From Octopus vulgaris (taxonomy: Eukaryota): a stretch of 64,000 nt of DNA. A program made the position numbers and the translations under genes. The notes beneath the pieces were generated by a model. That model was not told the DNA's origin and did not search any database. It saw only the letters and a program-made list of their open reading frames with translations. Location: contig OX597818.1 in NCBI GenBank assembly GCA_951406725.2, positions 49,228,001 to 49,292,000 on the forward strand, given 5' to 3'. The number at the start of each line of letters is the position of its first letter. Position 1 is the stretch's first letter. This document shows, one piece after another, positions 31,052 through 58,210 of the stretch.

Positions 31052-31099
31052 TACATAAGGATAAAATGTCACGAAGTAGCACTAAATAGGAATCAGCAG
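31052..31099 (+). CDS. Candidate host-gene exon (YIRIKCHEVALNRNQQ), phase 0-0
   Basis: ttctttttgtatacttatactttAG acceptor and CAG|GTTTAT donor; the only open frame fits the next exon. Confidence 0.35.
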
Positions 31100-31135
31100 G
31101 TTTATGTAGTCTTCCTGTAATATTTTTGATTATCA

Positions 31136-31708
31136 CAGCAGCGAGCTGGCAGAAATGTTAGCACGCCAGGCGAAATGCTAAGCGGTATTTCGTCTGCCAT
31201 TACGTTCTGAGTTCAAATTCCGTCGAGGTCGACTTTGTCTTTCATCCTTTTGGGGTCGATTAAATAAGTACCAGTTACAACTGGGGTCGATATAATCGAC
31301 TTAATCCATTTGTCTGTCCTTGTTTGTCCTCTATGTGTTTAGCCCCTTGTGGGTAGTAAAGAAATAGGTATTTCGTCTGTCTTTACGTTCTGAGTTCAAA
31401 TTCCGCCAAGGTCGACTTTGCCTTTCATCCTTTCGGGGTCAATTGAATAAGTACCAGTTACGCGCTGGGGTCGATATAATCGACTTAATCCGTTTGTCTG
31501 TCCTTGTTTGTCCTCTCTGTGTTTAGCCCCTTGTGAGTAGTAAAGAAATAGGTATTTTGTCTGTCTTTATGTTCTGAGTTCAAATTCTGTTGAGGTCAAC
31601 TTTGCCTTCATCCTTTCAGGGTCGAAAGTACCAGTTGTGTACTGGGTTACATCTAATTGACTGTCACTCACCTTCAAAAGTTTGGGCCTTGTACCTAGAG
31701 TAGAAAAG
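31136..31708 (+). mobile_element. SINE A with a tandemly triplicated body inside one 17-bp TSD
   Basis: TSD AATATTTTTGATTATCA at 31119-31135 and 31709-31725; unit starts at 31186, 31369 and 31553. Confidence 0.9.
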
Positions 31709-32514
31709 AATATTTTTGATTATCAGCTACTTGTGAGTACCTCTGGTTCTATGACCCAAAATCATGAGCTCTAAATAGTTCATATTTAAATTATAACCCA
31801 CAAACAATTACAACTTAGAATTAGAACCGTTTTGTAAGAAGTTATGCTCCAAAAACCAGTTTAATATGCCAGCAAATGAAGGGCTGAAGTAGGATCTTCT
31901 ATGTAGTCAATCAAGCTGCTAGAAATAGCAATCAAATTTGTCAAAGGCTACATTAAATAATGTGGTATTTAAAAAAAATATAGGGTGGGGGGTCACAACT
32001 GGAAAAATCTTCGATTTTAGGTTTACTCATACAGGGTTGACCTGGGTTAAACAATGAAGACAAAAACAGCACCCACTAAATGAAAAAGTGAATTGTAGTT
32101 ATTTAAACCCTCTAAATTCTTAATTATTTTCACAATTAGTCAAAACACGCAGAGGCTGATTAGTTAGGTATCTGTTCATAATAGAATACAATACACCTGG
32201 GAATATTATAAACAACAAAGACAGTCATTAGCAAAGGGCAATTATCTGATGAGCTTGTGGGTCAAAGGAGCAAGTGTGTTAGTCATATCTGATGGTAAAT
32301 ATCATTTTTCCCCTGTTTTGATACCCCTTTGATACAACTTTAGGGTTGCAGGCAGAGCAGCTTGTGTTATGCTCAACAGTGCTCTGTGGTAGAGACTGCC
32401 GCTCGATGATTGGTCTGCACAGCCACACCAGGAAGTGCAGATAAACCCACCACCTTTTCCGGGCTACACCATCGTTTCTCGAGACGGACGTATGCCGAAG
32501 AAAGGAGAGGCTCT

Positions 32515-32600
32515 ACATATAGTAATCCAAGGGATTATAACTGGGGAATTAGGAGACCAGAAATTGGGATCAAAGTCATAAAAATTCTCCAACATACAGC
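32515..32600 (-). mobile_element. Tc1/mariner-superfamily transposase remnant
   Basis: LENFYDFDPNFWSPNSP, then after a frameshift YNPLDYYM (WPPNSPDLNPLDY motif). Confidence 0.55.
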
Positions 32601-32657
32601 TGTTCCTGAAAAAAAATCATCAAATTTAGCCTGATTTCTCTGTATACGTGCACGCGC

Positions 32658-32699
<42 letters not shown>

Positions 32700-32735
32700 C
32701 ATTAAAATAAGGATGGTGAATTGTACATGAACAAA

Positions 32736-32940
32736 GCATCATCATCATCATTATCATCATCATCATCATTGTTTAACGTTTGCTTTCCATGCTAGCATGG
32801 GTTGGACGATTTTGACTGAGGGCTGGCAAGCCAGATAGCTGCACCAGGCTCCAATCTTGATCTAGCAGAGTTTCTTCAGCTGGATGCCCTTCCTAATGCC
32901 AACCACTCCGAGAGTGTAGTGGGTGCTTTTTACGTGCCAT
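32736..32940 (-). mobile_element. RTE 3'-end repeat
   Basis: Same family as 5000-5515. Confidence 0.8.
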
Positions 32941-33419
32941 TACAATTGTATATACAATGTATTTTCTTTAAAACTCTGTCCGACATGTGTTTCTACCACA
33001 TAGATATCCTAGGGTGTGATATCCAGTATCATCCTGTTGGTTCAGTTGCATTATGATTTCATCCAAGGTAAACATATCCATGCAGCTTTATTCAAGTAGT
33101 TACTATTATGAGTCTTTGAAACAAACTGAAGTATATAGAATAGTGATGATCTTTTTCAATGTATATTCTTTGTATATCTCTGCTAAACACACTTATCCCC
33201 CACCAAAAATATGCATATATAGACTAAAGTGTGAAAGAGGGACAGGAACAGATATCTTGTTGTAGAGGAGATTGTTATACCTGCTGAAAAGTGAGAAAGG
33301 ACAGTAGAGATGAAATGCCAGAGCATATTCTCAAAGTACAAGAGAACGGGGTCAGATAATTGAGCGAAGGTTGGATGGGTGGATTTGCAAGAGTAAGAAG
33401 GTAAGTGACAGAAAGTTAG

Positions 33420-33870
33420 AAATGGGTATGGATACATTGAAACTCTGACGTCTGGCAGCTGACTTGGCAGACGCCCATAAAATTATTAACCGTCTTACTA
33501 ACAATAACTCTGAGCACCTTTTCAAACTCCACCTGTCTAACACCCGTGGACATGTTTACAAAGTCAGAAAACAGCACAGCTCCCATGACTTTCGGAAACA
33601 TTTTTTCATGTTAAGAGTTGCTGAAGCATGGAACAAACTGCCGGCATCAGTTGTTAGTTGTCGGAGCACTGCATCCTTCAAAACTTCCATGCTTCCTGAT
33701 ATTCACCAACACTACACCTGATTTTCTCCCCTCCATACACACAAGCATGTATCTGACTCATACACTATTCACTTCTCAGACATTTGTACATTACTGCATA
33801 TGCTTTATATGCACTTTTGACAAGTTGTGGTGCACCTGAGCACTGTATACAATAATTTCATTATTATTAT
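33420..33870 (+). mobile_element. CR1 LINE 3' end with (ATT)n tail
   Basis: NTRGHVYKVRKQHSSHDFRKHFFMLRVAEAWNKLPASVVSCRSTASFK. Confidence 0.9.
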
Positions 33871-33899
33871 TATCATTATTATTATTATTATTATTATTA

Positions 33900-33974
<75 letters not shown>

Positions 33975-33976
<2 letters not shown>

Positions 33977-34145
33977 GTTTGACTTTTGCTTTATATTTGT
34001 ACAAGTTGGCTCCAAGTCTCACCCAGAGACCTCAAGAGACAACAGGTTGGAAGTTCATGTTGTTGTTATGCCTAGTGTGCCATATATTTGTTTTTGTCTT
34101 TTTGGTGTTGTACTAGTGAATGTCCAAAAAAAAAAAAACCGAAAA
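33975..34145 (-). mobile_element. R4/Dong-like 3' UTR fragment embedded in (TAA)n
   Basis: Homologous to 12397-12545 (GGCTCCAAGTCTCACCCAGAGACCTC); TTA repeats on both sides. Confidence 0.75.
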
Positions 34146-34157
34146 TTATTATTATTA

Positions 34158-34222
<65 letters not shown>

Positions 34223-34593
34223 ATTATTATAAGATGAATGTAGTGGATAAGGAACACATGTAAATGAATATGTTCACATGTATTCATGTATATCCATGTA
34301 AAATCAATTTATCAAACAAAATTTGCAAATCTGAAGAGTTACATTCCTTTACATTAAAAGATAAATTTAACCAAAGAAATACAGATTGATAAAATAGAGT
34401 ACTCTACTCTATCAATATTGATCTAATAGATCAATATTAATATTGATCTATTAATAGATCAATATCATCTATTAAAACCATTGAGAGTGATGCTCCAGAA
34501 TATTTGCCCTTCTATGATAGAAATTAGTACAAGAATAAAGGAACATTATATTAATTTTTTCTTTTTTTTTTTCTATTCTTCTTTTTGGAATAG

Positions 34594-34627
34594 AGCTTTT
34601 CCAAGAAAGAAAAGACAGGTCATACAG
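34594..34627 (+). CDS. Candidate host-gene exon, 34 nt (SFSKKEKTGHT-G in phase 0-1; alternative frame AFPRKKRQVIQ)
   Basis: Long polypyrimidine tract + TAG acceptor and a perfect CAG|GTAAGT donor. Confidence 0.6.
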
Positions 34628-35349
34628 GTAAGTACTGAAAATTGTGAAGTTGAAATTAAATAATTCTAAAATTGTAAAATCTCAACAAGAGATCAGAGTA
34701 GTAACTATACTAACAAGTAAAGTCGATCGCCACATCAAAGTGGCTGTTCCATGTTACTACTAGTTTAACCCCTGACAGATCTTCTGCCAGCTGGTTACGT
34801 GTGTTACTGCACCCATTATCTAACTCTCACATCTCTGTAGGAGAAGGTTTATCTCTCTATTCCACTTACAGAACTTATGTCTGGGTGTTTACAAATTTGC
34901 ATTTTGTAAACAATGTTTTGAAACTGTCCATGTTTTCGAAAGGAGAGATCTGACTCTTTTCAACCATAACGTCTACCAATTTTGATGTATTTTGTCCAAA
35001 CTTGATGCCAGCATTACTTAGGACTCATGGGATCTTTGACTGCTTTAAGTTCTCCAAAAACGAAAAAAGAAACAATCAATCATCGTTTAACGCCCGCTTT
35101 CCATGCTAGCATGGATCGGACGGTTCAACTGGAGTCTGGGAAGCCCGAAGGCTGCACCAGGCCAGTCAGATCTGGTGGTGTTTCTACAGCTGGATGTCCT
35201 TCCTAACGCCAACCACTCCGTGAGTGTAGTGGGTGCTTTTTATGTGCCACCGACACAGGTGCCAGATGAGGCTGGCGAACGACCACGCTCGGATGGTGTT
35301 TTTTTACGTGCCACCGGCACGGAGGCCAGGCGAGGCTGGCACAATGAGT

Positions 35350-35546
35350 GGAAAAAAATCAATAAACCGATTCCTTATGGGATTTCCTAATCAAATTGTC
35401 TGCAAAATTTCAGCCAAAAGTTTACCAATTTCAACGGATTTCACTCAAATTTGATGTCGATGTTACTTAGTTTGCTTTGAAATAAAGAGCTTGATTAGCT
35501 TAATAATCCTAACTTAATCCCGAGCAAAGCTGGGCTATACTGCTAG
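35350..35546 (+). mobile_element. Non-autonomous Helitron 3' part
   Basis: CCCGAGCAAAGCTGGG hairpin, then CTAG|T. Confidence 0.6.
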
Positions 35547-35555
35547 TATACAATA

Positions 35556-35755
35556 TATATTGCTAGCAGGATGTGTGAACCCCTACCATCCTCTAGCAGA
35601 CAACAGGACAATATATTGCTGACTGGAGCAGACCTTGGTTATCGCTCCGGTGCTCGCGACTGAGGTTAAGCCAACCAGCTTTAAACTGAGTCAGTCTTGC
35701 AATCCTATTGTCTGCTAGAGGATGGTAGGAGTTCGCTCCCCCTGCTAGCAATATA
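35556..35755. mobile_element. MITE with long imperfect TIRs; right half repeated at approx. 36460-36612
   Basis: TATATTGCTAGCAGG...CCTACCATCCTCTAGCAGACAA / TTGTCTGCTAGAGGATGGTAGG...CCTGCTAGCAATATA. Confidence 0.7.
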
Positions 35756-36257
35756 CAGGGTGTCCACAAAGTCTGGGTACATGGAGTAAATAAAATCATA
35801 ACATAAAGAATTAAATATAAGAAATAGTAATTTCTTAAAGTATGTGTCAATCTCCATGTGGGTACATGGAGTAAATAAAATCATAACATAAACAATTGAA
35901 TATAAGAAATAATAATTTCTTAAAGTATGTGTTAATCCCCATGTGGGTACATGGAGTAAATAAAATCATAACATAAACAATTGAGTATAAGAAATAATAA
36001 TTTCTTAAAGTATGTGTTAATCCCCATGTGGGTACATGGAGTAAATAAAATCATAACATAAACAATTGAGTATAAGAAATAATAATTTCTTAAAGTATGT
36101 GTTAATGCCCATGTGGGTACATGGAGTAAATAAAATCATAACATAAACAATTGAGTATAAGAAATAGTAATTTCTTAAAGTATGTGTTAATCCCCATGTG
36201 GGTACGATGTAAATAAAATCATAACATAAAGAATTAAATATAAGAAATAGTAATTTA
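35756..36257 (+). repeat. Tc1/mariner-type end (TA-CAGGGTGTCC) followed by ~5.7 tandem copies of an 85-bp unit
   Basis: GGGTAC at 35775, 35860, 35945, 36030, 36115 and 36200. Confidence 0.9.
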
Positions 36258-36617
36258 TATAAAAGTTGCAGCATCACACTGATAACCAGTGGCCAGAAGA
36301 CTGACCTGGGGTTAAACATGCAGTAACACGGAGCAGCTACTTTAATGTGGCAATTGACTTTACTTGTTTGTATAATTACTATTCTGATCCCTTCTTAAAG
36401 ATTTTGCAACTAGCTATTTTGCTTTTTGCAAATCAGTGACTGATGGTCACTTTGTTTACAATACATTGCTGGCTGGAGCAGATCCTGACTCTCACTGTGG
36501 TGACCAGGTGCTCATGGTTGAGGATGAGCCAACCAGCTTGAAACTGAGTCAGTCTCGTGATCCTGTTGTCTGCTAGAGGATGGTAGGAATTCGCTCCCCC
36601 TGCTAGCAATCTACACA

Positions 36618-37010
36618 TCTCTATATATAAAAGTAAGGTTGTGTGCTGTCTGTCTCCTACGATTTAGATTCCTAACTACTCCCACATTTTGTGGTGCAGT
36701 TTAACCAAAACCGGGTATCTTATAGTCGTGATTCATATCGAGCCCTTCTGGGTATTAGCGTGCGTCTTCGATGAGTCTATGATTTAAAAAAAAATTTACC
36801 ATCAATTTTTCCCATTTTTAATGCATTTTTGGCATATATAAGGGAAGTAACTCTCTAAAAATTTATTATTAAATCTCAGAATGTAAAAAGCTACAGTAAC
36901 ACCCCCCTGTGGTTAGCCATATTGAGATGGCTATTATACTTTACATCTCTAAAAATGCTTATATAGTTATTTCCCTTACAAACCCGAGCAACGTCGGACG
37001 ATACTGCTAG
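36618..37010 (+). mobile_element. Non-autonomous Helitron
   Basis: A|TC 5' end, subterminal CCCGAGCAACGTCGG hairpin, CTAG|T 3' end, no TSD. Confidence 0.8.
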
Positions 37011-37127
37011 TTGTATATAAAGCATGCAGTGTCGCACCAATAACCAGCTGGTGGAAGATCTGCTTGGGGTTAAACTAGTAGTAACATGGAACACCCCTAG
37101 CTAGCAATCTATATATTGTATATACAT

Positions 37128-37540
37128 AGGCGTAGGCATGGCTGTGTGGTAAGTAGCTTGCTTACCAACCACATGGTTCCAGGTTCATTCCCACTGCATG
37201 GCACCTTGGGCAAATGTCTTCTACTATAGCATCGGGCTGACCAAAGCCTTGTGAGTGGATTTGGTAGACAGAAACTGAAAGAAGCCCGCCGTATATGTGT
37301 ATATATATATATGTGTGTGTGTGTCTATGTGCTTGTGTGTCTGTGTTTGTCCCTCCAACATCGCTTGACAATCGATGCTGGTGTGTTTACGTCCCCATAA
37401 CTTAGTGGTTCGGCAAAAGAGACCAATAGAATAAGTACTAGGCTTACAAAGAACAAGTCCTGGGGTCGATTTGCTCGACTAAAGGCGGTGCTCCAGCATG
37501 GCCACAGTCAAATGACTGAAACAAATAAAAGAGTAAAAGC
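37128..37540 (+). mobile_element. SINE family B, full length
   Basis: Homology to other copies. Confidence 0.9.
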
Positions 37541-37774
37541 ATGCAGTGTTGCACCAATGACCAGCTGGTGGAAGATCTGCCTGGGGTTAAACGAGTTGTA
37601 ATAACAGGGAACAGCCACTTTGATTTGAGAATTGACTTTACTTAATTCTAAAATTATTTTATTGAAATATTTTAATGTTGAAGTATGTCACATTATGAAA
37701 TTGAAATATCATCATATTTGGATACTCGAAATTTGAGATGCATTTCATTTATTTAACCTAATTTAAATCAAAAT

Positions 37775-38975: not shown

Positions 38976-41110
38976 GGCTGGTCCTTTGTTATAAGTACAA
39001 TTCATTCAATAGACTTCTACGTTGTTTTTGTTCACTCAGTTCCACTCAAGTAGTCTTGAGTAGACGAAAGGTTATCATAGAAGACTGTGGTGACGTGCAG
39101 TGAGACTGAACCTAGCATTTCATGATTCTGAAGCAAGTTTCTTAATCACACACAATAAAACATACATATATAATAAATACAGGTATGAAGTAATATCAAT
39201 TAATCAACTTAGAATTCAAACCTTAGAATTAGGTTACATAACCTAATTTACTGATAAATAAATGAAATGCATCTCAAATTTTGTGGTGGTTTGGAATGGT
39301 CATTACTCCAATAATAATGAAGACATGCACTGGTTCAATATCACTTCTTTATGCTTAGTGGCATTTCATTCATCTTTATGTTCTGAGTTCAAATTCTATT
39401 GAGATCAGCTTTGCCTTTCATCTGGGTCAATAAGATAAGTACCAGTTGAACACTGGGGTCAGTGTAATTGACCTACCCCATCACCTAAATTCACTGACCT
39501 TGTGTCAAAATTTGAAACCAGTATACCTTATATATCTTTTATCTTTTACTTGCTTCACTCATTGGAATGCAGCCATGCAACTGGTTAAATATCTAACCAA
39601 CTAACTAACTGATCATTTATTTAATGTTGTTTCCTTGTCAAAGTCCTATTCACAAATACATCAATGACATGCTCTCTCTCTTTTCAAAGACTGCTTTGAG
39701 GTCTGTCTGAGAATTAGTCTTATGCTTGTCTGTACGTATGTAGATGTATGATTGCTTACAAGAGAATGGAATGGGTGAAAAGACTTTGACAAATAAACAA
39801 TCAATTGATAGTTTAGCCACCACATTAAACAAACAATTAGTTAGAGCTTTAGTTAGATATTTAAACTGTTGACTAACAGCAAAGAATTGTATTTATCATT
39901 ATTGACTTAATGACCCTCCCAAGACACAAGAATTCACAGCAAGAATCTTGCAAAAGTATTCTAATAAATTATGCTTAAATTTTTAGGATTGTTGCTGAAG
40001 ACTCTCTACCAGAAACTCTATGATGTGATTATCCAAGTCTTTGGTGTGTGTGAGAGAGAGAGAGAGAGAGAAGGCTGGTCCTTTGTTATAAGTACAATTC
40101 ATTCAATAGACTTCTACGTTGTTTTTGTTCACTCAGTTCCACTCAAGTAGTCTTGAGTAGACGAAAGGTTATCATAGAAGACTGTGGTGACGTGCAGTGA
40201 GACTGAACCTAGCATTTCATGATTCTGAAGCAAGTTTCTTAATCACACACAATAAAACATACATATATAATAAATACAGGTATGAAGTAATATCAATTAA
40301 TCAACTTAGAATTCAAACCTTAGAATTAGGTTACATAACCTAATTTACTGATAAATAAATGAAATGCATCTCAAATTTTGTGGTGGTTTGGAATGGTCAT
40401 TACTCCAATAATAATGAACACATGCACTGGTTCAATATCACTTCTTTATGCTTAGTGGCATTTCATTCATCTTTATGTTCTGAGTTCAAATTCTATTGAG
40501 ATCAGCTTTGCCTTTCATCTGGGTCAATAAGATAAGTACCAGTTGAACACTGGGGTCAGTGTAATTGACCTACCCCATCACCTAAATTCACTGACCTTGT
40601 GTCAAAATTTGAAACCAGTATACCTTATATATCTTTTATCTTTTACTTGCTTCACTCATTGGAATGCAGCCATGCAACTGGTTAAATATCTAACCAACTA
40701 ACTAACTGATCATTTATTTAATGTTGTTTCCTTGTCAAAGTCCTATTCACAAATACATCAATGACATGCTCTCTCTCTTTTCAAAGACTGCTTTGAGGTC
40801 TGTCTGAGAATTAGTCTTATGCTTGTCTGTACGTATGTAGATGTATGATTGCTTACAAGAGAATGGAATGGGTGAAAAGACTTTGACAAATAAACAATCA
40901 ATTGATAGTTTAGCCACCACATTAAACAAACAATTAGTTAGAGCTTTAGTTAGATATTTAACCTGTTGACTAACAGCAAAGAATTGTATTTACCATTATT
41001 GACTTAATGACCCTCCCAAGACACAAGAATTCACAGCAAGAATCTTGCAAAAGTATTCTAATAAATTATGCTTAAATTTTTAGGATTGTTGCTGAAGACT
41101 CTCTACCAGA
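38947..41110 (+). repeat. Near-identical tandem duplication (~1067-bp copies, 1097-bp period)
   Basis: AAGGCTGGTCC at 38974 and 40071; only about 3 substitutions seen; ~30-bp linker at 40014-40043. Confidence 0.95.
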
Positions 41111-41208
41111 ACTCTAATGTGGCAATCATAGTTAGTCAAATACCTGAAGGAGTGGCATATATCCAAGTTTCTTTGACTAATTCTATTTCCTTTGCAAACG
41201 TTTCTGTG
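41084..41208 (+). CDS. Host-gene exon, phase 1-0 (LLLKTLYQNSNVAIIVSQIPEGVAYIQVSLTNSISFANVSV)
   Basis: aaatttttAG acceptor and GTG|GTAAGA donor; single open frame, compatible with the downstream exons. Confidence 0.65.
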
Positions 41209-44831: not shown

Positions 44832-45252
44832 TAGGCGCAGGAGTGGCTGTGTGGTAAGTAGCTTGCTAACCAACCACATGGTTCCAGGTTCAGTCCCACT
44901 GCGTGGCATCTTGGGCAAGTGTCTTCTGCTATAGCCCCGGGCCGACCAATGCCTTGTGAGTGGATTTGGTAGACGGAAACTGAAGGAGGCCTGTCGTATA
45001 TATGTATGTATATATATGTATGTGTGTGTGTGTTTGTGTGTCTGTGTTTGTCCCCCTAGCATTGCTTGACAACCAATGCTGGTGTGTTTACGTCCCCGTC
45101 AATTAGCGGTTCGGCAAAAGAGACCGATAGAATAAGTACTGGGCTTACAAAGAATAAGTCCCGGGGTCGATTTGATCGACTAAAGGCGGTGCTCCAGCAT
45201 GGCCGCAGTCAAATGACTGAAACAAGTAAAAGAGTAAAAAAAGAAAGAGAGT
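44832..45252 (+). mobile_element. SINE family B, full length
   Basis: Homology to other copies. Confidence 0.9.
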
Positions 45253-45360
45253 AAACATTTTTGCTATAGGAAAATTCACCATAAGTGATTTCATTTTAAC
45301 CCTTAGAACCCAAACTGCCATATATTCCCAATATATTGTAACCCTTAGGACCCAAGGCTG

Positions 45361-45870
45361 TCATCATCATCATCATCATCGTTTAACATTCATTTTCCGT
45401 GCTAGCACGGGTTGGATGGTTCAACCGGGGTCTGAGAAGCCAGGAGGTTGCACCAGGCTTCAGTCTGATCTGGCAGTGTTTCTACAGCTGGATGCCCTTC
45501 CTAACGCCAACCACTCTGTGAGTGTAGTGGGTGCTTTTTACGTGCCACCGGCACAGGTGCCAGGGGAGGCTGGCAGCATCCACGATCAGTTGGTGCTTTT
45601 TACGTGCCACCAGTACAGAAGCCAGTCAAGGCGTTGCTGGCATCGGCCATGTTCGGATGGTGCTTTTAACGCACCACCGGCACAGGTATCACAACTACAA
45701 TTTCTATTTGATATTTATTTTGATGTTGATGTACTTGACTCAATAGGTCTCCTCAAGCACAGCAGGTTATGTGCCACCGGCACAGAAACCAGTCAAGGCA
45801 GCGCTGGCATCGGCCACATTCAGATGGTGCTTCTTACCTTCCGCCGGCACAGGTATCATAACTACAATTT
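45361..45870 (-). mobile_element. RTE 3'-end repeat nested in piggyBac
   Basis: Same family as 5000-5515. Confidence 0.8.
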
Positions 45871-46389
45871 CCATTTGTATGTATATTCTCAAAATGCCAG
45901 TGTCTTCATTTTGTTACACACTGTAGAAATAGCCACTTGAACCATTTAGCAACCAATCAGTGAGTGTATTATTTTGGGTCTTTGCCATACATACTCTATC
46001 ATGGATTCCTTATTTCATGCTTGAATTTTGCCAAGAATGTCTTCAAACTGTGTCAGTGCTGAAGAAGCACCAGCTCAGATTCTTGGTGATGATGAGAAGG
46101 ATTTAGATGAGTCTGATTACAGTAGCAAAAGTGATTTTGAGCATGAAACTAGCAAAGAATTGCCCAGCAATTCTGACAGTGATCAAGGTGAACTTGTACA
46201 TAACGTAGACAATGCTGCAGTGCATATTCAAATGCCCCATGCTAATAGGAGGGGGTGGCCATAGTGGTGGGTATGGCAGAGGCTTGATGGCGGTAGTAAA
46301 TATGAATATTCCTGCGCCCTGGAGACGAGATATGGCTGGTTTTACTGCAAGACTGTTTAATCCTAACCATCCCACAGATCCAAAAGATA

Positions 46390-46425
<36 letters not shown>

Positions 46426-46435
46426 GTTTAACGTC

Positions 46436-46656
46436 CACTTTTCATGCTAGCATGGGTTGGACGATTTCACTGAGGTCTGGCGAACCAGATGGCTGCACCA
46501 GACTCCAATCTGATCTGGCAGAATTTCTACAGCTGGATGCCCTTCCTAACACCATCCAGCTATAGAAACTCTGCCAGATCAGATTGGAGTCTGGTGCAGC
46601 CATCTGGTTCGCCAGACCTCAGTCAAATCGTCCAACACATGCTAGCATGGAAAGTG
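46436..46656. repeat. Fold-back of an RTE 3' end: 104-bp arms, 13-nt spacer, about 5 mismatches
   Basis: Arms 46436-46539 and 46553-46656. Confidence 0.9.
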
Positions 46657-47365
46657 CACCTAATATAAATGGAGAAAGTGGTACCCTAGCTTTCCTCTCC
46701 CTTTTCGGGGATAATGTGCTTTGGGACATTTTGGTTAGAGAAAGTAATAAGAATGCCACATGTGTCAAGGCTGCTAAGCCCAATAACTATGCTGCAAAAA
46801 GATGGTATGACATGACAGTAAAAGAGATGAAGGCCTTCTTTGCTTGTAGAGTTGCTGCAGAGATGTTAGCTCATAAGGATAGGTATGAACAGTACTGGCA
46901 TACAAAAGGCAGCTTTTTGACATTAACTCTAGGATTTGGGCAGGTCATGGTAAGGAACAGGCTTTTAGCTATGTGGTCAATGTTACACTGTGTTGATGAG
47001 GATGATCCTAATGTAAATAAGAAAGACAAAATACATAAGTCACAGCCAGATATTGGTTATATCTTGCCAAGGTTTCAAAAGCATTTTGTGACTGAATATG
47101 AGATGTCTTCAGATGAAGGTATGATTCTGACCAAAAATGCTTTATCCATAAAGACAAACCCATCCATTGGTGCTTGAAGACATTCCTGCTAACAGACAGT
47201 GCAAATGTTTACATTGTGAATGTTGAAGTGTACTCTGGAAGGAGACCAGATGCTTGAGCAGTTGATAATTTGGGTGTCACAGGGACTCTCGTAGTGCAAA
47301 TGATGGAGGGATAACAAACAGGCCTAGAACTATTCACTATTCATGGACAGATTTTATACATCAGT

Positions 47366-50837: not shown

Positions 50838-50915
<78 letters not shown>
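50725..50915. repeat. (AC)n compound microsatellite
   Basis: Direct reading. Confidence 0.95.
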
Positions 50916-50918
<3 letters not shown>

Positions 50919-51218: not shown

Positions 51219-51290
51219 TCACCAAATCACAAAGCCACGGTTCGAGTCAATTCATCAAAACTGAAACCTTCCCAAAAATACGATGTAAAG
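51219..51290 (+). CDS. Host-gene exon, phase 0-0 (SPNHKATVRVNSSKLKPSQKYDVK; FN3-like L-x-P-x-x-x-Y-x-V)
   Basis: ttccttttgttttcacAG acceptor and AAG|GTAATA donor; 72 nt. Confidence 0.75.
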
Positions 51291-51309
51291 GTAATATTTT
51301 ATATTGTTT

Positions 51310-51965: not shown

Positions 51966-51993
51966 ACTTATTTAATATTTCATATTTAATATT

Positions 51994-52228
51994 TTGCAGC
52001 ATGGAAGGTGTTTATAAGCCATTTAAGAAACACACAAAAACTGTTAGATTCACTTCAACATTTAAATTTAATTTACCAAAATCAGATGCAGCACGGAATT
52101 TTGTCAGTGAACAGGTTGCAGTCTCAAAGTGACAAAAATATTTTGGTAAATTAAATTTAAATGTTGAAGTGAATCTAACGATTTTTGTGTGTTTCTTAAA
52201 TGGCTTATAAATACCTTCCACGCTGCAA
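51994..52228. repeat. Inverted repeat, 89-bp arms, 57-nt spacer
   Basis: Arms 51994-52082 and 52140-52228. Confidence 0.9.
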
Positions 52229-52690
52229 TTGTTTTCCTTCCAGCACACGATCTCAGATCAGGTCACTTGCTATGCAAGTACATCTCCGTAATTAAATATT
52301 TTATTTAAGAGAAAACACAGGTATGTCTTGAGTTACAAAAGCACTGTATTCCCTAAAATTTATTTTCCTTTTGATATTTTTGCCATGTAACAGAAAGTTT
52401 TTATCTTACAGAATTACATGTTATGGCACAATTTACGGAATGTGGTGCTTTTGTAATACAGATGTCTGCATTTAAAAAGAAAATTTTCTCTCTGTTTTCA
52501 ACATATCACAAACATTGGGAATGTCATGGTCACAGACCCTTGTATCTAACTAAAACCAATAAAAATAACAAATACACACACAAGCCAATAACATGCTAGA
52601 AATAACAACTGACTATCTCTCAAATCATACATATAAGGTAATCCTACAAAGATTCATTGTGCTTTGAACATACACAATAGAATACCATCA

Positions 52691-52726
<36 letters not shown>

Positions 52727-52885
52727 CTCGCTTTCCGTATCATATTTGCTCTTTCTCTCTCTCTCTCTTTCCCTCTAACGTTTGCTCTCTCTCTCTTTCA
52801 CTTTCACCCTCTCTCTCTCTCTCTCTCACACACATACTTTCGTTTTCTCTCTCTCTTCCACTCTCATTCTTTCTCTCTCTATTAG

Positions 52886-53250
52886 AACAAATCGACCCCA
52901 GGATTTATTCTTTGTAAGCCTAGTACTTATTCTATCGGTCACTTTTGCTGAACCGCTAAGTTACAGGGACCTAAACACACCAGCATTGGTTGTCAAATGA
53001 TGTTGGGGGACAAACACAGACACACAAACATACACACACATACACACACACATATATATACATATATATATATACATATATATGACGGGCTTCTTTCAGT
53101 TTCCGTCGACCAAATCCACTCACAAGGCTTTGGTCGGTCCGAGGCTATAGTAGATGACACTTGCCCAAGGTGCCACACAGTGGGACTGAACCCGGAACCA
53201 TGTGGCTGGTAAGCAAGCTACTTATCACACAGCCACTCCTACGCCTATGA
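52886..53250 (-). mobile_element. SINE family B, preceded by (TC)n at approx. 52690-52880
   Basis: Homology to other copies. Confidence 0.88.
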
Positions 53251-54228
53251 GTATAGAGTTTTAAAATTTTTATGAAATAGTTTCCATGGTTAGAAAATGT
53301 GAAAAACGAATCATACTGCTGGAATATCTTTTATTGAAATTAACAACATCCACGTGAGGGATGAGCATGGTGCTGGCTAAGTATTTCAAGCAGTTCATCT
53401 GGTCTTTCGGATGCTGACCCCCATTCGACTCCTTGGCTATCATTGCTGCCCCCCCCCCCCCCACTGTAATTCTCCGCCAACCCCTTCGGGGTCCCTCGAA
53501 CCCCCTTTGGCAACCCCTGGACAAGAAAACTATTACTTTGCTTGGAAACTGGTAAAGGTTAGCAACTGGACAGGTCTCCAGCCATAGAAAATCTACCTCG
53601 ACAAGTTCCATCTGACCCATGCAAATATGTAAAAGCAGATGTTAAAAAGAACGGAAACAAACTGAACAGCAATGTATATTGCATAAACCACTTTTCCACC
53701 TATGATTAAGGACGCTTACATTTTTTTAATTCTCTCACATCTTGTCATCATCATGTCTTCCTTCCAGTTACTCTCACTTTATATAATGTAGGATATAGCA
53801 AGACATCTATACCCGTCCCTGTATTTATTTAAGCTTCTCAATACCCAACATGAAGCTACCTCCCTCTTTACTACACCCTCATTTGGTTAATGGTAATCGG
53901 CAGGATCATTTTCTTTGTTTTGTGAGATACAGGGTGACCTCACTAGTGCTGGTGTCATAAAAATAACAGCCAGTACTTTCTGCAAAGTTATAAGCATTAG
54001 GAAGAGCATCCAGCCACTGAAACTATGCCAATGCAGACATTTTTATTTGATGCAGTTCACCAGTTCATTGGATCTCATCAAACTGTCCATCCTATGTCAA
54101 CATGAAAAACATACATTAAATAATAGTGATGATGATGATGATGATGATGATATGTCATGAGATTAACTAATAAATCAATCGTACTCATTAAATTTTATTG
54201 TTTCTTTCTTTTTTTTTTATCATTATAG

Positions 54229-54289
54229 ATACTTTTGGGAAAAATCTTTACTACAGGAACTATTTATCGTTTTCCATCAGCTGTTCAAA
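54229..54289 (+). CDS. Host-gene exon, phase 0-1 (ILLGKIFTTGTIYRFPSAVQ-I)
   Basis: Long T-rich tract + TAG acceptor and AAA|GTAAGT donor; 61 nt. Confidence 0.78.
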
Positions 54290-54422
54290 GTAAGTGATAA
54301 CCTCTTATTAAATTTCATAAGATGGCGAGATGGTGTGAGGGTGGTTGCTATGGTATTGAGGTAAATCCGGCCACCCCCGTTAATGGGGACAAAACCCGGA
54401 TTTAAAACACTGGATGATGATA

Positions 54423-54459
<37 letters not shown>

Positions 54460-54809
54460 CGACGACGATGACGACGACGACGATGATGATGATGATAATT
54501 TGATGTATTTTTGAATGATTGCATTTATGCATAATCAGTGGAGCCATTAAAAACATACATACACTGTCGTATTCATTGAAGTGGAGGATGAGGGTGAAGA
54601 GGTGGTGTGCAGACTGTACCATCAACAAATTTGATGAAGATACAGGCTCAAGTACTGAAACTGCTACTTAGGGAAGGACCGATCCTAGAATTCTGCTGAA
54701 AGATTATAAGCAGAAGAGAACTGCAAGCCAGAGCACAAATGGTCCCAAAATGTCTTAGTGTTCCATCTCTTCTGTGTGCTTATTTTTTTTTTTTTTATAT
54801 TGCTACATA

Positions 54810-55339
54810 GTGGAGGCACATGGTCTAGTGCAGTGGTTTTTAGCCAGGGTTCCGTGGAACCTTAGGGTTCCGCCAGTACAGTCCAGGGGTTCCATAAGAA
54901 GTTACAAAACTGCTAAAATCGGCAGTAATTTTTAATTCTCCTGTGCAGATATGTGTGCATAAGACTATTAAATTATTGCACAGGGGTTCCCCGAGCCGGT
55001 GGAATGTTTCCTTGGGGTTCCGCTCCAGCAAAAAGTTTGAAAAGCACTGGTCTAGTGGTTAGAGCACCGAACTCGTGGTCGAGGGATCGCGAATTCAAAT
55101 CTCAGACTGAGCAATGTGTGTATTTATGAGCGAAACACCTAAGCTCCACACGGCTCCGGTAGAAGGTAATGGTGAACTTATGCTGACTCTTTCGCCACAA
55201 CTTTCCCTCACTCTTTCCTCCTGCATCTTACAGCTCACCTGCGACGGACCGGCGTCTCATCCAGGTTGGAAACCTATACACCAAGGAAACCGGGAAACCG
55301 GCCCTTATGAGCCAGGGAAGGCTCGAGAAAGAACAAACA
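54810..55339 (+). mobile_element. SINE family E with a hAT MITE in its tRNA head
   Basis: 13-bp TSD ATATTGCTACATA at 54797-54809 and 55340-55352. Confidence 0.92.
54831..55049. mobile_element. hAT (Charlie-like) MITE, 219 bp
   Basis: 8-bp TSD GTCTAGTG at 54823-54830 and 55050-55057; TIRs CAGTGGTTTT / AAAAGCACTG. Confidence 0.9.
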
Positions 55340-55429
55340 ATATTGCTACATAATTTCATGTTTTCTGTCTATTATTTTTTTATGTTGTGTTATCTTTTTG
55401 TCCCTTTTCAGATTACTTATTTATTTATT

Positions 55430-55508
55430 TTGTGTGTGTGAGTAGTGTGTGTGTGTGTGTATGTGTGTGTGTGTGTGTGTGTGAGTTTGTGTGTAAGTGT
55501 TTGTGTGC

Positions 55509-55542
<34 letters not shown>

Positions 55543-55659
55543 GTGTTTGTGTGTATGTGTTTGTGTGTGTGTGTTTGTGTGTATGTGTGTGTGTGTATGT
55601 GTTTGTGTGTTTGTGTGTGTGTGTGTGTGTGTGTTTGTGTGTTTGTGTGCGTGTGTGTG

Positions 55660-55720
<61 letters not shown>
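55430..55720. repeat. (TG)n compound microsatellite
   Basis: Direct reading. Confidence 0.95.
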
Positions 55721-55722
<2 letters not shown>

Positions 55723-56143
55723 CCAACATATTTTGTAACCTTTCTTGTTTAACATGTTTTGTATTTATGGTGAAAATGTTCATTTTTGCACTCCATGTTA
55801 AAATCGACACTGAACTAACGGCTGTAAACAAAATTACGTGCAATTTGCTACTAAAATAAGCTAGAAATAATGGCTATCAAATGTCAAAAGGAAAAATAAA
55901 GCATAACATTGACAAAAGTCATTCAAAAAAATCGTAATTGTATCTATTTGTGAAAAACGAAATTACTTTCTTGCCAACCCAATATAACAATGTTACAAAG
56001 ATCAATATAATGGTTTGTGTACATCTTGCTTCTACAGACATCTAATTGATTGTTTCAGCAGGTGATCTCAGGTAAATACCCTGACAAACAAGTACAACTC
56101 AAAAATATTTAACATTCATGTATTTTTTTTCTCTTTCTTTTAG

Positions 56144-56301
56144 TTCCCCCCAGAAATTTTTCAGTTCAATGTAACAAAGTGGATAACTATGTAAATATTA
56201 ATTTTACACATCTTAACGAAGAAACAAAACTATACACAGTGTTTATAACACAACAAAGGCATCCTTCATTAAGAATATTATGCAGTGACTCTGTAAATTT
56301 G
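56144..56301 (+). CDS. Host-gene exon, phase 1-0 (PPRNFSVQCNKVDNYVNINFTHLNEETKLYTVFITQQRHPSLRILCSDSVNL; FN3-like N-half)
   Basis: ttttttctctttcttttAG acceptor and TTG|GTAAGT donor; 158 nt open. Confidence 0.82.
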
Positions 56302-56324
56302 GTAAGTATTCTCTTTCTCTCTTT

Positions 56325-56535
56325 TTTCTCTTTTACTTGTTTCAGTCATTTGACTGCGGCCATGCTGGAGCACCACCTTTAGTCGAGCAACTCGACCCTG
56401 GGACTTATTCTTTTATAAGCCCAATACTTATTCTATCGGTCTCTTTTGCCGAACCGCTAAGTGACGGGGATGTAAACACACCAGCATCGGTTGTCAAGCA
56501 ATGCTAGGGGAACAAACACAGACACACAAACATAT

Positions 56536-56578
<43 letters not shown>

Positions 56579-56735
56579 TGACAGGCTTCTTTCAGTTTCC
56601 GTCTACCAAATCCACTCACAAGGCATTGGTTGGCCTGGGGCTATAGCAGAAGACACTTGCCCAAGATGCCACGCAGTGGTATTGAACCCGGAACCATGCG
56701 GTTGGTAAGCAAGCTACTTACCACACAGCCACTCC
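56325..56735 (-). mobile_element. SINE family B; a degraded further copy lies at approx. 56860-57300
   Basis: Homology to other copies. Confidence 0.88.
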
Positions 56736-57679
56736 TTAATTTTCTGATAAGGGTTTCTTCTCATATGTAGGGTACAGTTTATTGTTTTAGAACAAGGATG
56801 GAATTGTAGAGAAGTAATAGATTTAGATGAATTAACCCCCAACATATTACTGTTCCTTTACTTTTTACTTGTCCCAGTCATTAGACTGCGGCCATGCTGG
56901 GGCACAGATTTGAAGAACTTTATTTGACTGAATCAACCCCAGTTCTTATTTTGTTTTAAAACCTGGTACTTATTCTATCAGCCTCTTTTGCCAAACCTCT
57001 AATTATAAGGATGTAAACAAACCAACGCTGGTTATCAAATGGTGATGGGGAACAAATACAGATACAAAGACACACATGCGCATACACACACATGCACAAA
57101 CACACAGACACATACACAAGCACACAAATATATGATAAGGTTCCTTCAACTTCCGACTAAAAAAGCTGTTCACAAGGCTTCGGTCAGCCTAAGGCTACAG
57201 TAGAAGACACTTGCCCAAGGTGCCAAGCAGTAGGACTGAACCTAAAACCTAAAACCATGTTATTGGGAAGCAAACTTATTGCCACACTGCCATGCCTAAT
57301 TAAAAAAAAAAGAAAAAAAAACAGCGGAAAAAGAATAAAAGAATAAAAGAATAAAGAATTTAATTACTTTGCCAGTGAAGGATCAGCAGTGCTCATGATC
57401 TTTGCAGACAGACAAGACCCCAGTGAACTCAAAAAAGTGAACTCAGTACCAGCAGAATTTGAACTCAGAACACAGAAAGATGAAAGAAGATATTGTGAGA
57501 CATTTAATGCAGTATTTTACTGTTTCTCTTGAGTTCCTGAAAAGTGGAAAGATTCCAACAAGGGGTTGAAACTGTTTTCTTTTCTTCTCTAAATCAAACT
57601 AATGTCAGTGATGAAAGTTTTTTAACTATTCTCTACTTTATAAAATATCCTTTCTATTAAAGGCACAAGGCCTGAAATT

Positions 57680-57900
57680 GTGTTTAGCCCGTTGTGGGTA
57701 GTAAAGAAATAGGTATTTCGTCTGCCGTTACGTTCCGAATTCAAATTCCGCCAAGGTCGACTTTGCTTTTCATCCTTTCGGGGTCGATAAATTAAGAACC
57801 AGTTGCGCACTGGGGTCGATGTAATCGACTTAATCCCTTTGTCTGTCCTTGTTTGTCCCTTCTGTGTTTAGCCCCTTGTGGGTAGTAAAGAAATGGGTAT
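57680..57900 (+). mobile_element. SINE A body (about 1.2 units)
   Basis: Homology to other copies. Confidence 0.8.
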
Positions 57901-58132
57901 TTTATTTTATCAATTCTGGAAGGCTGAAAAGCAAAGATGACTTTGGTAGAAATCACTCACAGTAATATAAAGGACAACCATTTAGACATTTATGAACTAC
58001 ACACCACAATGCAGTTCTGATTTTCTACCATCAGTGCCATCTTCCTAGATATTTAAATACTGAAATTATTTTATTCATATAAAAGTATCCCTAAATGATT
58101 TTATTTTCTAACCAGTTTTTCTTATTTTTCAG

Positions 58133-58210
58133 ACTGACCAAGAAACACAAATGATCCACATGCAATTCAAATCTCAATGTTTCCAATGTGGCAAATATTA
58201 TTATGTATTT
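58133..58210 (+). CDS. Host-gene exon, phase 0-0 (TDQETQMIHMQFKSQCFQCGKYYYVF); donor position less certain
   Basis: tttttcttatttttcAG acceptor and TTT|GTAAGA donor; only frame 0 is open. Confidence 0.68.

What the first reader, a model, noticed from the sequence alone, without database searches (positions are those of the whole stretch)
31052..58210. Unannotated + strand gene for a divergent FN3-like extracellular protein built from a repeating three-exon module
Seen: five exons with strong splice sites join in frame for 164 codons, ...VSQIPEGVAYIQVSLTNSISFANVSV|SPNHKATVRVNSSKLKPSQKYDVK|ILLGKIFTTGTIYRFPSAVQI|PPRNFSVQCNKVDNYVNINFTHLNEETKLYTVFITQQRHPSLRILCSDSVNL|TDQETQMIHMQFKSQCFQCGKYYYVF. Phases repeat 1-0, 0-0, 0-1, 1-0, 0-0. 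Five N-glycosylation sequons occur (NVS, NSS, NFS, NFT, and NLT formed across a junction). Candidate exons 31052-31099 and 34594-34627 extend the chain upstream in phase. Established: PPxN at the start and LxPxxxYxV near the end typify FN3 domains. Inference: a lineage-divergent cell-surface receptor, possibly cytokine- or IL-17-receptor-like; I do not recognise an ortholog.
Basis: partly seen in the sequence, partly recalled or inferred. Interest (0 to 1): 0.7.

Follow-up and report, generated by a model that had tools for sequence, protein, structure and literature searches.

The report
Octopus double-FN3 receptor gene, IL-17R-like

Summary
The five exons are real. They match, residue for residue, NCBI models of Octopus sinensis LOC115212051 (XP_029636720.1, 592 aa) and O. 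bimaculoides LOC106868403. The full gene has 11 coding exons at window coordinates 9892 to 78559, so it runs 14.5 kb past the window end. All 20 splice dinucleotides are conserved in three species, and dN/dS against O. bimaculoides is 0.52.

- The first listed exon starts at 41084, not 41132.
- Candidate exon 34594-34627 is confirmed; 31052-31099 is not supported.
- The three-exon module (phases 1-0, 0-0, 0-1) occurs exactly twice. The predicted third exon of module 2 lies at 64288-64348.

The protein has a signal peptide, two FN3-like domains, a stalk, one transmembrane helix and a 300-aa tail encoded by one exon. A low-confidence AlphaFold model of the ectodomain is all-beta and matches tandem FN3 receptors, IL-17RA among them.

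The tail fails Pfam SEFIR. It does share a SEFEX-like segment and a C-terminal LERINERND motif with true octopus SEFIR receptors (P about 1e-3). The SEFIR core itself is not demonstrable.

A tandem paralog downstream has a very different ectodomain (about 23% identity) but a tail kept about 90% identical by gene conversion.

Verdict: real gene, probable degenerate IL-17R-like receptor, moderately interesting.

The parts
9892..9984 (+). Coding exon 1: start codon and signal peptide (MNLVLGLMISVLFVDHSGGTSLNSLQDENNL). Ends in phase 0.
   Evidence: tblastn of P0004, 97% identity. Donor GTGAGT. Conserved in O. sinensis and O. bimaculoides.
34594..34627 (+). Coding exon 2 (SFSKKEKTGHT, phases 0-1). 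It is skipped, together with exon 3, in isoform X2.
   Evidence: 100% match to P0004 residues 32-43. Donor score 12.7. Absent from P0001.
41084..41208 (+). Coding exon 3: first exon of FN3-like domain 1 (phases 1-0).
   Evidence: P0004 residues 43-84 match at 100% from 41083. AG at 41082-41083.
51219..51290 (+). Coding exon 4: second exon of domain 1 (phases 0-0). Carries the LKPSQKYDVK F-strand-like motif.
54229..54289 (+). Coding exon 5: third exon of domain 1 (61 nt, phases 0-1).
   Evidence: Donor GTAAGT. 100% match to P0004.
56144..56301 (+). Coding exon 6: first exon of FN3-like domain 2 (phases 1-0). Contains conserved Cys138 and Cys175.
   Evidence: Best splice scores in the window. 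Its 52-aa peptide retrieved XP_036359090.1 at 98% identity.
58133..58210 (+). Coding exon 7: second exon of domain 2 (phases 0-0). Its last codon is TTT (Phe) here and AAT (Asn) in O. sinensis.
58211..64000 (+). 5' part of intron 7. The gene continues past the window end. The remaining coding exons, in window-relative coordinates (genome = C5:49228000 + coordinate), are:
- exon 9, 67392-67445: Cys-containing stalk (phases 1-1);
- exon 10, 72551-72688: Ser/Thr-rich stalk plus the transmembrane helix (phases 1-1);
- exon 11, 77655-78559: the whole 300-aa cytoplasmic tail and the stop codon, with the SEFEX-like segment and the C-terminal LERINERND motif.
   Evidence: Flanking DNA fetched. Exons mapped. 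Splice sites conserved in three species. Tail analyses.

Best explanation
The window holds the 5' two-thirds of an intact 11-exon gene. It is most likely from Octopus vulgaris or a very close relative and is orthologous to O. sinensis LOC115212051.

The gene encodes a 592-aa type I membrane receptor with these parts in order:
- a signal peptide;
- two FN3-like beta-sandwich domains, each encoded by three exons with phases 1-0, 0-0, 0-1;
- a short Cys-containing, glycosylated stalk;
- one transmembrane helix;
- a 300-aa cytoplasmic tail encoded by a single last exon.

I read it as a strongly diverged ('degenerated') member of the IL-17 receptor / ILCR type of double-FN3 receptor.

Inferred mechanism: the fast-evolving ectodomain, D2 above all, binds one or more of the expanded octopus IL-17-like cystine-knot ligands. 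The conserved tail then recruits a SEFIR-type adaptor or a co-receptor chain to activate an NF-kB/MAPK-type response.

Shown here: the gene structure, its conservation, the membrane topology, the all-beta ectodomain, and the tail's local similarity to octopus SEFIR receptors.

Inferred only: the SEFIR fold of the tail core, the ligand, and the signalling route.
For: Gene and structure:
- The exon-by-exon match to XP_029636720.1 gives an intact 1779-nt CDS with GT-AG throughout.
- All splice sites are conserved in three species, and the only length changes are in-frame indels in the stalk exons.
- dN/dS against O. bimaculoides is 0.52 (bootstrap 0.36-0.76), and 0.26 in the tail core.

Topology and ectodomain:
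- One TM segment, 7 ectodomain sequons, and 6 ectodomain Cys residues conserved between the paralogs.
- Pfam fn3 is sub-threshold on both domains (E 0.005-0.025).
- The AF2 ectodomain model is all-beta, in two blocks of 6 and 7 strands.
- Foldseek gives 37 PDB hits at E<=1e-3. Nearly all are tandem FN3 pairs; IL-17RA is at rank 13 (E 4e-4).

Tail:
- hhalign against the tails of Pfam-positive octopus SEFIR exons gives P=9e-4.
- An HMM of those tails ranks the real tail 3rd among 5004 sequences that include 5000 shuffles.
- The global collinear alignment to a SEFIR+SEFEX alignment (which includes human IL-17RA and IL-17RB) scores 20.3. Column shuffles reach at most 14.1 (0 of 400), block shuffles at most 12.3 (0 of 200), and rotations at most 18.8 (0 of 96).
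- The comparison profile is a true SEFIR profile: it hits human IL-17RA SEFIR, PDB 4NUX, at E=1.4e-5.

Other:
- D2 aligns collinearly with the Ig_ILCR1 domain of octopus SEFIR receptors (P=0.026; 4 of 300 shuffles score as high).
- In both gene types the last exon begins in phase 1 just after the TM.
- Literature: canonical IL-17Rs are double-FN3 plus SEFIR, about half of invertebrate IL-17Rs have 'degenerated' domains that domain models miss (PMC11087794), and O. bimaculoides has 31 IL-17 genes (PMC8353272).
Against: - No Pfam SEFIR, TIR or IL-17R-specific FN3 family matches at E<=10.
- A whole-genome PF08357 scan finds 9 loci, none of them here.
- PDB sequence searches with the protein and with the tail profile find nothing.
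- Restricted to the putative SEFIR core (tail residues 14-175), the profile alignment is no better than shuffles: 5.4 against a mean of 3.6, with 56 of 300 shuffles at least as high. The significant signal is therefore confined to about 60 residues (alphaE/SEFEX-like) plus the C-terminal motif.
- The full-length hhalign against the ILCR1-like receptors gives only P=0.065.
- AF2 on the tail failed (pLDDT 35.7), and Foldseek on that model gives nothing.
- The ectodomain model is low-confidence (pLDDT 51.6). Its top Foldseek hits are class I cytokine receptors, so the fold search does not single out IL-17R.
- I picked the comparison families after seeing the resemblance by eye, so the P values are somewhat optimistic.
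Confidence: 0.58

Rival explanations
1. The gene encodes a real double-FN3 type I receptor, but its tail is a lineage-specific signalling or scaffolding region unrelated to SEFIR. Examples would be a class-I-cytokine-receptor-like or Torso-like ectodomain coupled to a novel octopus-specific cytoplasmic module. On this reading, the short similarities to octopus SEFIR receptors are shared docking motifs or chance.
For: - No SEFIR or TIR match in Pfam.
- The SEFIR-core-only profile alignment is not above shuffles.
- AF2 and Foldseek on the tail are uninformative.
- The top Foldseek ectodomain hits are IL-3R beta, IL-4R alpha and the leptin receptor.
- The family is restricted to Octopus.
Against: - There is no WSXWS motif, and the ectodomain contains no Trp at all (sequence).
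- The tail segment L..AL....P.W[YF] lies about 200 residues after the first beta-strand-like motif, the same spacing as SEFEX in IL-17RA and in the octopus SEFIR receptors.
- The LERINERND motif sits at the very C-terminus, as in the L031-type SEFIR receptors.
- D2 resembles Ig_ILCR1.
Confidence: 0.3
2. The locus is a decaying or non-functional duplicate. The RefSeq models would then be gene-prediction products without biological function.
For: - Against O. sinensis there are 14 nonsynonymous and 3 synonymous differences (omega about 1.2; 7 to 0 in the ectodomain).
- D2 and the stalk have omega of about 0.9 against O. bimaculoides.
- Exons are only slightly more conserved than their 100-bp intron flanks (91.3% against 89.2%).
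- No spliced protein fragment was found among 90-287-aa database proteins.
- The exact protein is absent from the collection.
Against: - A 592-codon ORF is intact in three species, and all 20 splice dinucleotides are kept.
- The only indels are in frame.
- Overall omega is 0.52 with an upper bootstrap bound of 0.76, and the tail core is at 0.26.
- The CDS is 99.0% identical to O. sinensis, against about 96-98% for the collinear intron DNA.
- High omega confined to the ligand-binding domain is the usual pattern for immune receptors (established knowledge).
Confidence: 0.07

Closest known systems
IL-17 receptor family (e.g. human IL-17RA: ectodomain PDB 3JVF/7UWM, SEFIR/SEFEX PDB 4NUX)
   Same: - Type I topology with two FN3-like ectodomain domains.
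- The cytoplasmic domain begins right after the TM.
- A helix-like segment L..AL....P.W[YF] lies about 200 residues into the tail, where IL-17RA has LRAALDRFRDWQVRCPDWFE.
- The ectodomain model hits IL-17RA in Foldseek at E 4e-4.
   Different: - No Pfam SEFIR or IL-17R FN3 match.
- The SEFIR core similarity is not significant.
- There is no Trp in the ectodomain.
- The family is limited to Octopus.
Octopus ILCR1-like SEFIR receptors (O. sinensis LOC115217418 = P0007; O. vulgaris P0006/P0008; Argonauta P0009; own-genome loci L029-L036)
   Same: - Same overall architecture, with a single last exon in phase 1 encoding the whole tail.
- Shared NWY/WF segment and C-terminal L-E-x-I-N-E-R/Y-N-D motif.
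- D2 aligns collinearly with their Ig_ILCR1 domain (F-[ST]-H...Y-[TN]-V, C-x-G-x-Y...V-[KR]-P).
   Different: - Those proteins pass Pfam SEFIR (44-49 bits) and Ig_ILCR1 (34-58 bits); this one passes neither.
- They have one annotated Ig-like domain; this protein has two FN3-like domains.
- Pairwise sequence similarity is not significant.
'Degenerated' invertebrate IL-17Rs as defined in PMC11087794
   Same: That paper reports that about half of the IL-17Rs in each subphylum (amphioxus excepted) have double-FN3 domains, and often SEFIR domains, too diverged for domain models. It attributes this to rapid co-evolution with ligands. The present gene fits that description, including the fast-evolving D2 (omega 0.89).
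   Different: Whether that study counted this octopus family is unknown; I did not find it named there. Here even the SEFIR is below detection, which the paper describes as less common than FN3 degeneration.
Class I cytokine receptors (cytokine-binding homology region, two FN3 domains)
   Same: They are the best Foldseek matches of the ectodomain model: IL-3R beta, IL-4R alpha, leptin receptor, IL-2R beta.
   Different: - No WSXWS motif.
- No four-Cys pattern in D1; all six ectodomain Cys residues lie in D2 or the stalk.
- No fn3 or cytokine-receptor Pfam hit above threshold.

Membership tests
IL-17 receptor family | Type I membrane protein: signal peptide, single TM, extracellular N-terminus | tested here: met
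   The N-terminal leader is hydrophobic (MNLVLGLMISVLFV). There is one Kyte-Doolittle peak, in the 19-residue windows starting at 268-282, and 7 N-glycosylation sequons lie before it.
IL-17 receptor family | [quoted passage not shown] | tested here: inconclusive
   Pfam fn3 scores only 15-17 bits against a cut-off of 25, and no IL-17R-specific FN3 family matches. AF2 gives an all-beta two-block model, but at pLDDT 51.6. Foldseek gives 37 hits at E<=1e-3, nearly all tandem FN3, including IL-17RA.
IL-17 receptor family | Cytoplasmic SEFIR domain (Pfam PF08357 at gathering score) | tested here: not met
   No PF08357 hit at E<=10 on any family member. The own-genome PF08357 scan hits 9 other loci, not this one. 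The core-only profile alignment is not above shuffles.
IL-17 receptor family | SEFIR extension (SEFEX-like helix) and tail collinear with known SEFIR receptors | tested here: inconclusive
   Local hhalign gives P=9e-4. The global score of 20.3 exceeds all 696 shuffled, block-shuffled or rotated controls. However, the signal is carried by about 60 residues plus the C-terminal motif.
IL-17 receptor family | Binds IL-17-type cystine-knot ligand; signals through a SEFIR adaptor (CIKS/Act1) | not testable with these tools
   Needs binding and signalling assays.
Fibronectin type III domain (Pfam PF00041) | Sequence match at the curated threshold (25 bits) | tested here: not met
   Scores of 17.4, 16.7, 15.3 and 15.2 bits, E 0.005-0.025. 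The paralog P0005 has no hit.
Fibronectin type III domain (Pfam PF00041) | Seven-strand beta-sandwich fold of about 90-100 residues | tested here: inconclusive
   AF2 gives 6 and 7 strands in two blocks of about 90 residues each, with strand pLDDT of 50-72. The Foldseek top hits are FN3 pairs with probability about 1.0, but TM-scores are only 0.23-0.36.
Ig_ILCR1 domain (Pfam PF23608) | Sequence match to the profile | tested here: not met
   No Pfam hit. hhalign of D2 against the octopus Ig_ILCR1 domains gives P=0.026, and 4 of 300 shuffles score as high.
Class I cytokine receptor | WSXWS motif and conserved Cys pairs in the N-terminal FN3 | tested here: not met
   No WSXWS motif, no Trp in the ectodomain, and no Cys in D1.

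The most novel reading that the evidence does not exclude
The two tandem genes (this one and its downstream paralog) would form an octopod-specific receptor system. Their ligand-binding ectodomains are free to diverge (about 23% identity; D2 omega about 0.9). Their signalling tail is kept nearly identical by ongoing gene conversion. In O. bimaculoides the last exons of A and B are 96.6% identical, more than the A orthologs between species (94.8%), and 14 sites group by species against 8 by paralog. If the tail is a SEFIR so degenerate that no profile detects it, this would be a hidden branch of IL-17 receptors matched to the 31-gene IL-17 expansion of octopuses.
Probability: 0.35. Interest if true: 0.6.

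Novelty: new variant of a known kind. Interest (0 to 1): 0.42.

Why it matters
Octopuses have one of the largest IL-17 ligand repertoires known (31 genes in O. bimaculoides; PMC8353272). Their receptors, by contrast, are barely described, and domain searches find only a handful of SEFIR loci in this genome.

This would be a receptor pair that escapes every domain model yet keeps the double-FN3, TM and tail layout, plus tail motifs shared with octopus SEFIR receptors. That would enlarge the candidate receptor set and give a concrete ligand-receptor pairing experiment.

The contrast between a diversifying ectodomain and a gene-converted tail is also a tidy example of modular evolution in an invertebrate immune-type receptor.

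For annotation, the result supplies a complete gene model for this assembly. It also flags the 1149-aa O. bimaculoides RefSeq model as a probable fusion of two genes.

Tried and rejected
- Word-index protein search with the 164-aa spliced peptide found nothing, because candidates are limited to 90-287 aa.
- The representative search refuses spliced peptides. The single contiguous exon-6 peptide worked instead.
- A simple splice-PWM exon scan was too noisy to build the gene alone (20 candidates on the + strand against 7 on the - strand). It did flag the last exon.
- phmmer and BLASTP of the tail against octopus SEFIR tails were not significant.
- PDB sequence searches with the protein and with the tail profile found nothing.
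- AF2 on the tail with a 4-sequence alignment gave pLDDT 35.7. Foldseek on that model gave only E>0.19 hits to tRNA-synthetase anticodon domains, which I disregard.
- I did not run AF2 on the tail with SEFIR sequences added to the alignment. That would largely return the fold of the added sequences, so it is no test.
- Full-length hhalign against the ILCR1-like receptors found only the C-terminal motif, P=0.065.
- Global hhalign of D2 against Ig_ILCR1 failed.
- The SEFIR-core-only global hhalign is not above shuffles.
- The last word-index search, a padded query with region set to an octopus SEFIR tail, returned only 4 close relatives. No deep SEFIR profile could be built from it.
- There are no tRNA or Rfam features in the window.

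Full report
OBSERVATION

The window is G000:C5:49228001-49292000 of a 2.8-Gb genome. It is AT-rich (about 37% GC) and full of microsatellites and interspersed repeats.

They are flanked by polypyrimidine-AG and GT(A/G)AG sites and join in a single open frame.

A crude splice-PWM scan finds more candidate exons on the + strand than on the - strand (20 against 7). It gives exon 56144-56301 the best scores in the window.

IDENTIFICATION

The contiguous 52-aa peptide of exon 56144-56301, searched against 1.84 billion representative proteins, hit one eukaryotic protein at 98% identity. That protein is XP_036359090.1, 'uncharacterized protein LOC115212051 isoform X2' of Octopus sinensis. Its cluster mate is isoform X1, XP_029636720.1, 592 aa.

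Mapping isoform X1 onto 264 kb around the window gives 11 coding exons, in window-relative coordinates:
- 9892-9984
- 34594-34627
- 41084-41208
- 51219-51290
- 54229-54289
- 56144-56301
- 58133-58210
- 64288-64348
- 67392-67445
- 72551-72688
- 77655-78559

The CDS is 1779 nt, intact, with GT-AG at every intron.

The corrections are:
- The acceptor of exon 3 is at 41084, not 41132.
- The candidate exon 34594-34627 is exon 2.
- The candidate 31052-31099 is in no isoform, has weak splice scores, and has a GC donor in O. bimaculoides.

The third exon of the second module lies 288 nt past the window end. The module therefore occurs twice, once per domain.

WHICH GENOME

A SEFIR exon elsewhere in this genome is 100% identical to an NCBI protein of Octopus vulgaris. 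The locus is collinear with O. sinensis at about 96-98% identity, introns included. The assembly is therefore O. vulgaris or something very close.

The exact 592-aa protein is not in the 15-billion-protein collection. No O. vulgaris model surfaced in the homology searches. 'Unannotated' may thus be true for this assembly, but RefSeq models exist in O. sinensis and O. bimaculoides (LOC106868403, P0017).

IS IT A LIVE GENE?

- All 20 splice dinucleotides and the lengths of exons 1-8 and 11 are identical in three species. The only length changes are in-frame (18 nt and 3 nt) in the stalk exons of O. bimaculoides.
- Against O. bimaculoides, dS is 0.13 and dN/dS is 0.52 (bootstrap 0.36-0.76).
- By region, dN/dS is 0.31 for D1, 0.89 for D2, 0.93 for stalk plus TM, and 0.26 (0.11-0.57) for the tail core.
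- Against O. sinensis there are only 17 differences, 14 nonsynonymous and 3 synonymous. That is too few to interpret. The CDS (99.0% identity) is more conserved than the surrounding introns.

The gene is therefore under purifying selection overall, with a fast-evolving second ectodomain and stalk. I could obtain no direct transcript evidence with these tools.

THE PROTEIN

- It has an N-terminal hydrophobic leader and one strong TM segment (about residues 270-292).
- Six ectodomain cysteines all lie in D2 or the stalk and are conserved in the paralog.
- Pfam finds only sub-threshold fn3 matches, 15-17 bits against a cut-off of 25, on both domains.
- AlphaFold2 on the ectodomain was run with the only available alignment: four sequences in two paralog groups at about 23% identity. 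It gives a low-confidence model (pLDDT 51.6) that is entirely beta, with 6 and 7 strands in two blocks of about 90 residues each.
- Foldseek against the PDB returns 37 hits at E<=1e-3. Nearly all are tandem FN3 pairs: IL-3R beta, IL-4R alpha, integrin beta4, fibronectin, tenascin and NCAM. IL-17RA is at rank 13 (E 4e-4).

The fold search does not distinguish IL-17R from class I cytokine receptors. However, there is no WSXWS motif and no Trp in the ectodomain.

THE TAIL

The 300-aa tail is encoded by one exon. These tests were negative:
- Pfam reports no SEFIR, TIR or other domain.
- PDB sequence searches find nothing.
- AF2 failed (pLDDT 35.7), and its Foldseek output is noise.

A PF08357 scan of this genome finds nine SEFIR exons elsewhere. 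Their translated tails resemble this tail in several places:
- a first-strand motif: GLVICFPYPMEH here, against ILFLYSHDHQHH or GLLFYTEDH there;
- FIIVHSDG here, against FIILVYS or FVLLLHS there;
- an NWYTD / NWFQDKY segment;
- a C-terminal LERINERND / LEQINEYND / MLNERND motif.

Quantitatively:
- hhalign of the two small alignments gives P=9e-4 over the C-terminal part.
- An HMM of the SEFIR tails ranks the real tail third among 5004 sequences, 5000 of them shuffles.
- That profile is a true SEFIR profile, because it hits human IL-17RA SEFIR/SEFEX (PDB 4NUX) at E=1.4e-5.
- A global hhalign of tail residues 14-224 to an 8-sequence SEFIR+SEFEX alignment is collinear. It scores 20.3, above all 400 column shuffles (maximum 14.1), all 200 block shuffles (maximum 12.3) and all 96 rotations (maximum 18.8).

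When I cut both sides back to the SEFIR core alone, however, the score (5.4) is no better than shuffles, and 56 of 300 shuffles score at least as high.

The honest statement is therefore this. The tail shares a roughly 60-residue segment corresponding to alphaE plus the SEFEX helix (L..AL....P.W[YF], at the same distance from the TM as in IL-17RA), and it shares a C-terminal motif with true octopus SEFIR receptors. The 150 residues in between have the right length and an alternating beta/alpha prediction, but no demonstrable SEFIR sequence signal.

THE ECTODOMAIN LINK

The octopus SEFIR receptors retrieved with the last word-index search (P0006-P0009) carry Pfam Ig_ILCR1 plus SEFIR. D2 of the present family aligns collinearly with that Ig_ILCR1 domain over 94 columns. 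The match is weak: P=0.026, and 4 of 300 shuffles score as high.

The full-length profile comparison recovers only the C-terminal motif (P=0.065). In both gene types the last exon starts in phase 1 just after the TM.

THE FAMILY

Homologs are confined to Octopus: one ortholog each in O. sinensis and O. bimaculoides, plus one paralog.

The paralog lies 7 kb downstream, at window-relative 85614-137215. It is O. sinensis LOC115212086 and O. bimaculoides LOC106868483. It has the same two three-exon modules.

Its ectodomain is about 23% identical to this gene's, and its tail about 90% identical. Within O. bimaculoides the two last exons are 96.6% identical, more than the orthologs between species (94.8%). 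Fourteen sites group by species against eight by paralog, and the latter lie mostly at the 5' end of the exon. This indicates ongoing gene conversion of the tail exon.

INTERPRETATION

The literature defines IL-17Rs as double-FN3 plus SEFIR type I receptors. It reports that about half of invertebrate IL-17Rs have 'degenerated' FN3 domains, and often SEFIR domains, that domain models miss. It ascribes this to rapid co-evolution with ligands (PMC11087794). O. bimaculoides has 31 IL-17 genes (PMC8353272).

The architecture, the weak but collinear similarities in two separate regions to octopus SEFIR receptors, and the selection pattern (fast D2, conserved tail) make a degenerate IL-17R-like receptor the best reading (confidence about 0.58).

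Because Pfam SEFIR and FN3 thresholds are not met, I do not file it as a proven family member. The main rival is a double-FN3 receptor with a non-SEFIR, lineage-specific tail (about 0.3). A decaying gene is unlikely (about 0.07).

VERDICT

The gene is already modelled as 'uncharacterized' in sister species, so the novelty is in the functional assignment and the paralog-pair evolution, not in the gene's existence. Interest is moderate.

Noticed in passing
outside the window: window-relative 85614-137215 (+), i.e. C5:49313614-49365215: A tandem paralog (ortholog of O. sinensis LOC115212086 and O. bimaculoides LOC106868483) has the same exon architecture, with two three-exon FN3-like modules. Its ectodomain is about 23% identical to this gene's and its tail about 90% identical.
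   Followed up: partly
last exons: window-relative 77700-78559 and 136356-137215; L043:48351-49210 and 95989-96848: There are signs of gene conversion between the tail exons of the two paralogs. The O. bimaculoides A and B exons are 96.6% identical, against 94.8% for the A orthologs between species. Fourteen sites group by species and 8 by paralog.
   Followed up: partly
window-relative 111656-111751 (-), outside the window: A near-identical inverted copy of the 3' half of the paralog's exon at 121121-121274, together with its downstream intron. It is either a local inverted segmental duplication or an assembly artefact.
   Followed up: no
window-relative 137821-138139 (+), outside the window: A degenerate partial copy of the tail exon lies about 600 bp downstream of the paralog's stop codon. 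It is about 78-79% identical and contains stop codons.
   Followed up: no
L043 (O. bimaculoides CM046605.1), whole locus: The current RefSeq model XP_014769126.2 (1149 aa) joins genes A and B into one protein. The older models keep them apart (599 and 621 aa). The join falls inside the tail exon of A, so it is probably an annotation fusion.
   Followed up: partly
window 13013-15204 (-), intron 1: Mobile-element ORF fragments: a GIY-YIG nuclease domain (13013-13663; E 8.8e-5), typical of Penelope-like elements, and an integrase H2C2 zinc-binding domain (14719-15204; E 7.8e-13).
   Followed up: partly
window 46566-47177 (+), intron 3: A fragment of a piggyBac-type transposase (Pfam DDE_Tnp_1_7, E 5.4e-16).
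   Followed up: partly
window 4993-5355, 22815-23162, 45230-45940, 46209-46565 (+) and 61070-61498 (-): An interspersed repeat occurs at least five times. Its copies keep a long open frame with a conserved translation (...GCTRLQSDLAVFLQLDALPNANHSVSVVGAF...). Pfam found no match for the one copy tested (45230-45940).
   Followed up: no
window 58208-58210: The last codon of exon 7 differs from O. sinensis by a dinucleotide change (TTT Phe here, AAT Asn there) right at the unchanged donor site.
   Followed up: yes
own genome: C11:34588097-34840686 (L031-L034), C11:22531875-22571577 (L029-L030), C30:9144256 (L036), C3:176455798 (L028): SEFIR-encoding last exons cluster on contig C11: four near-identical copies within 250 kb and an inverted pair 40 kb apart. 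This suggests local expansion of ILCR1-like receptors in this octopus.
   Followed up: partly
window 9984 | 51219 junction (isoform X2 of O. sinensis): The RefSeq isoform X2 skips exons 2 and 3. That removes the first half of FN3-like domain 1 while keeping the reading frame. Its reality is untested.
   Followed up: no
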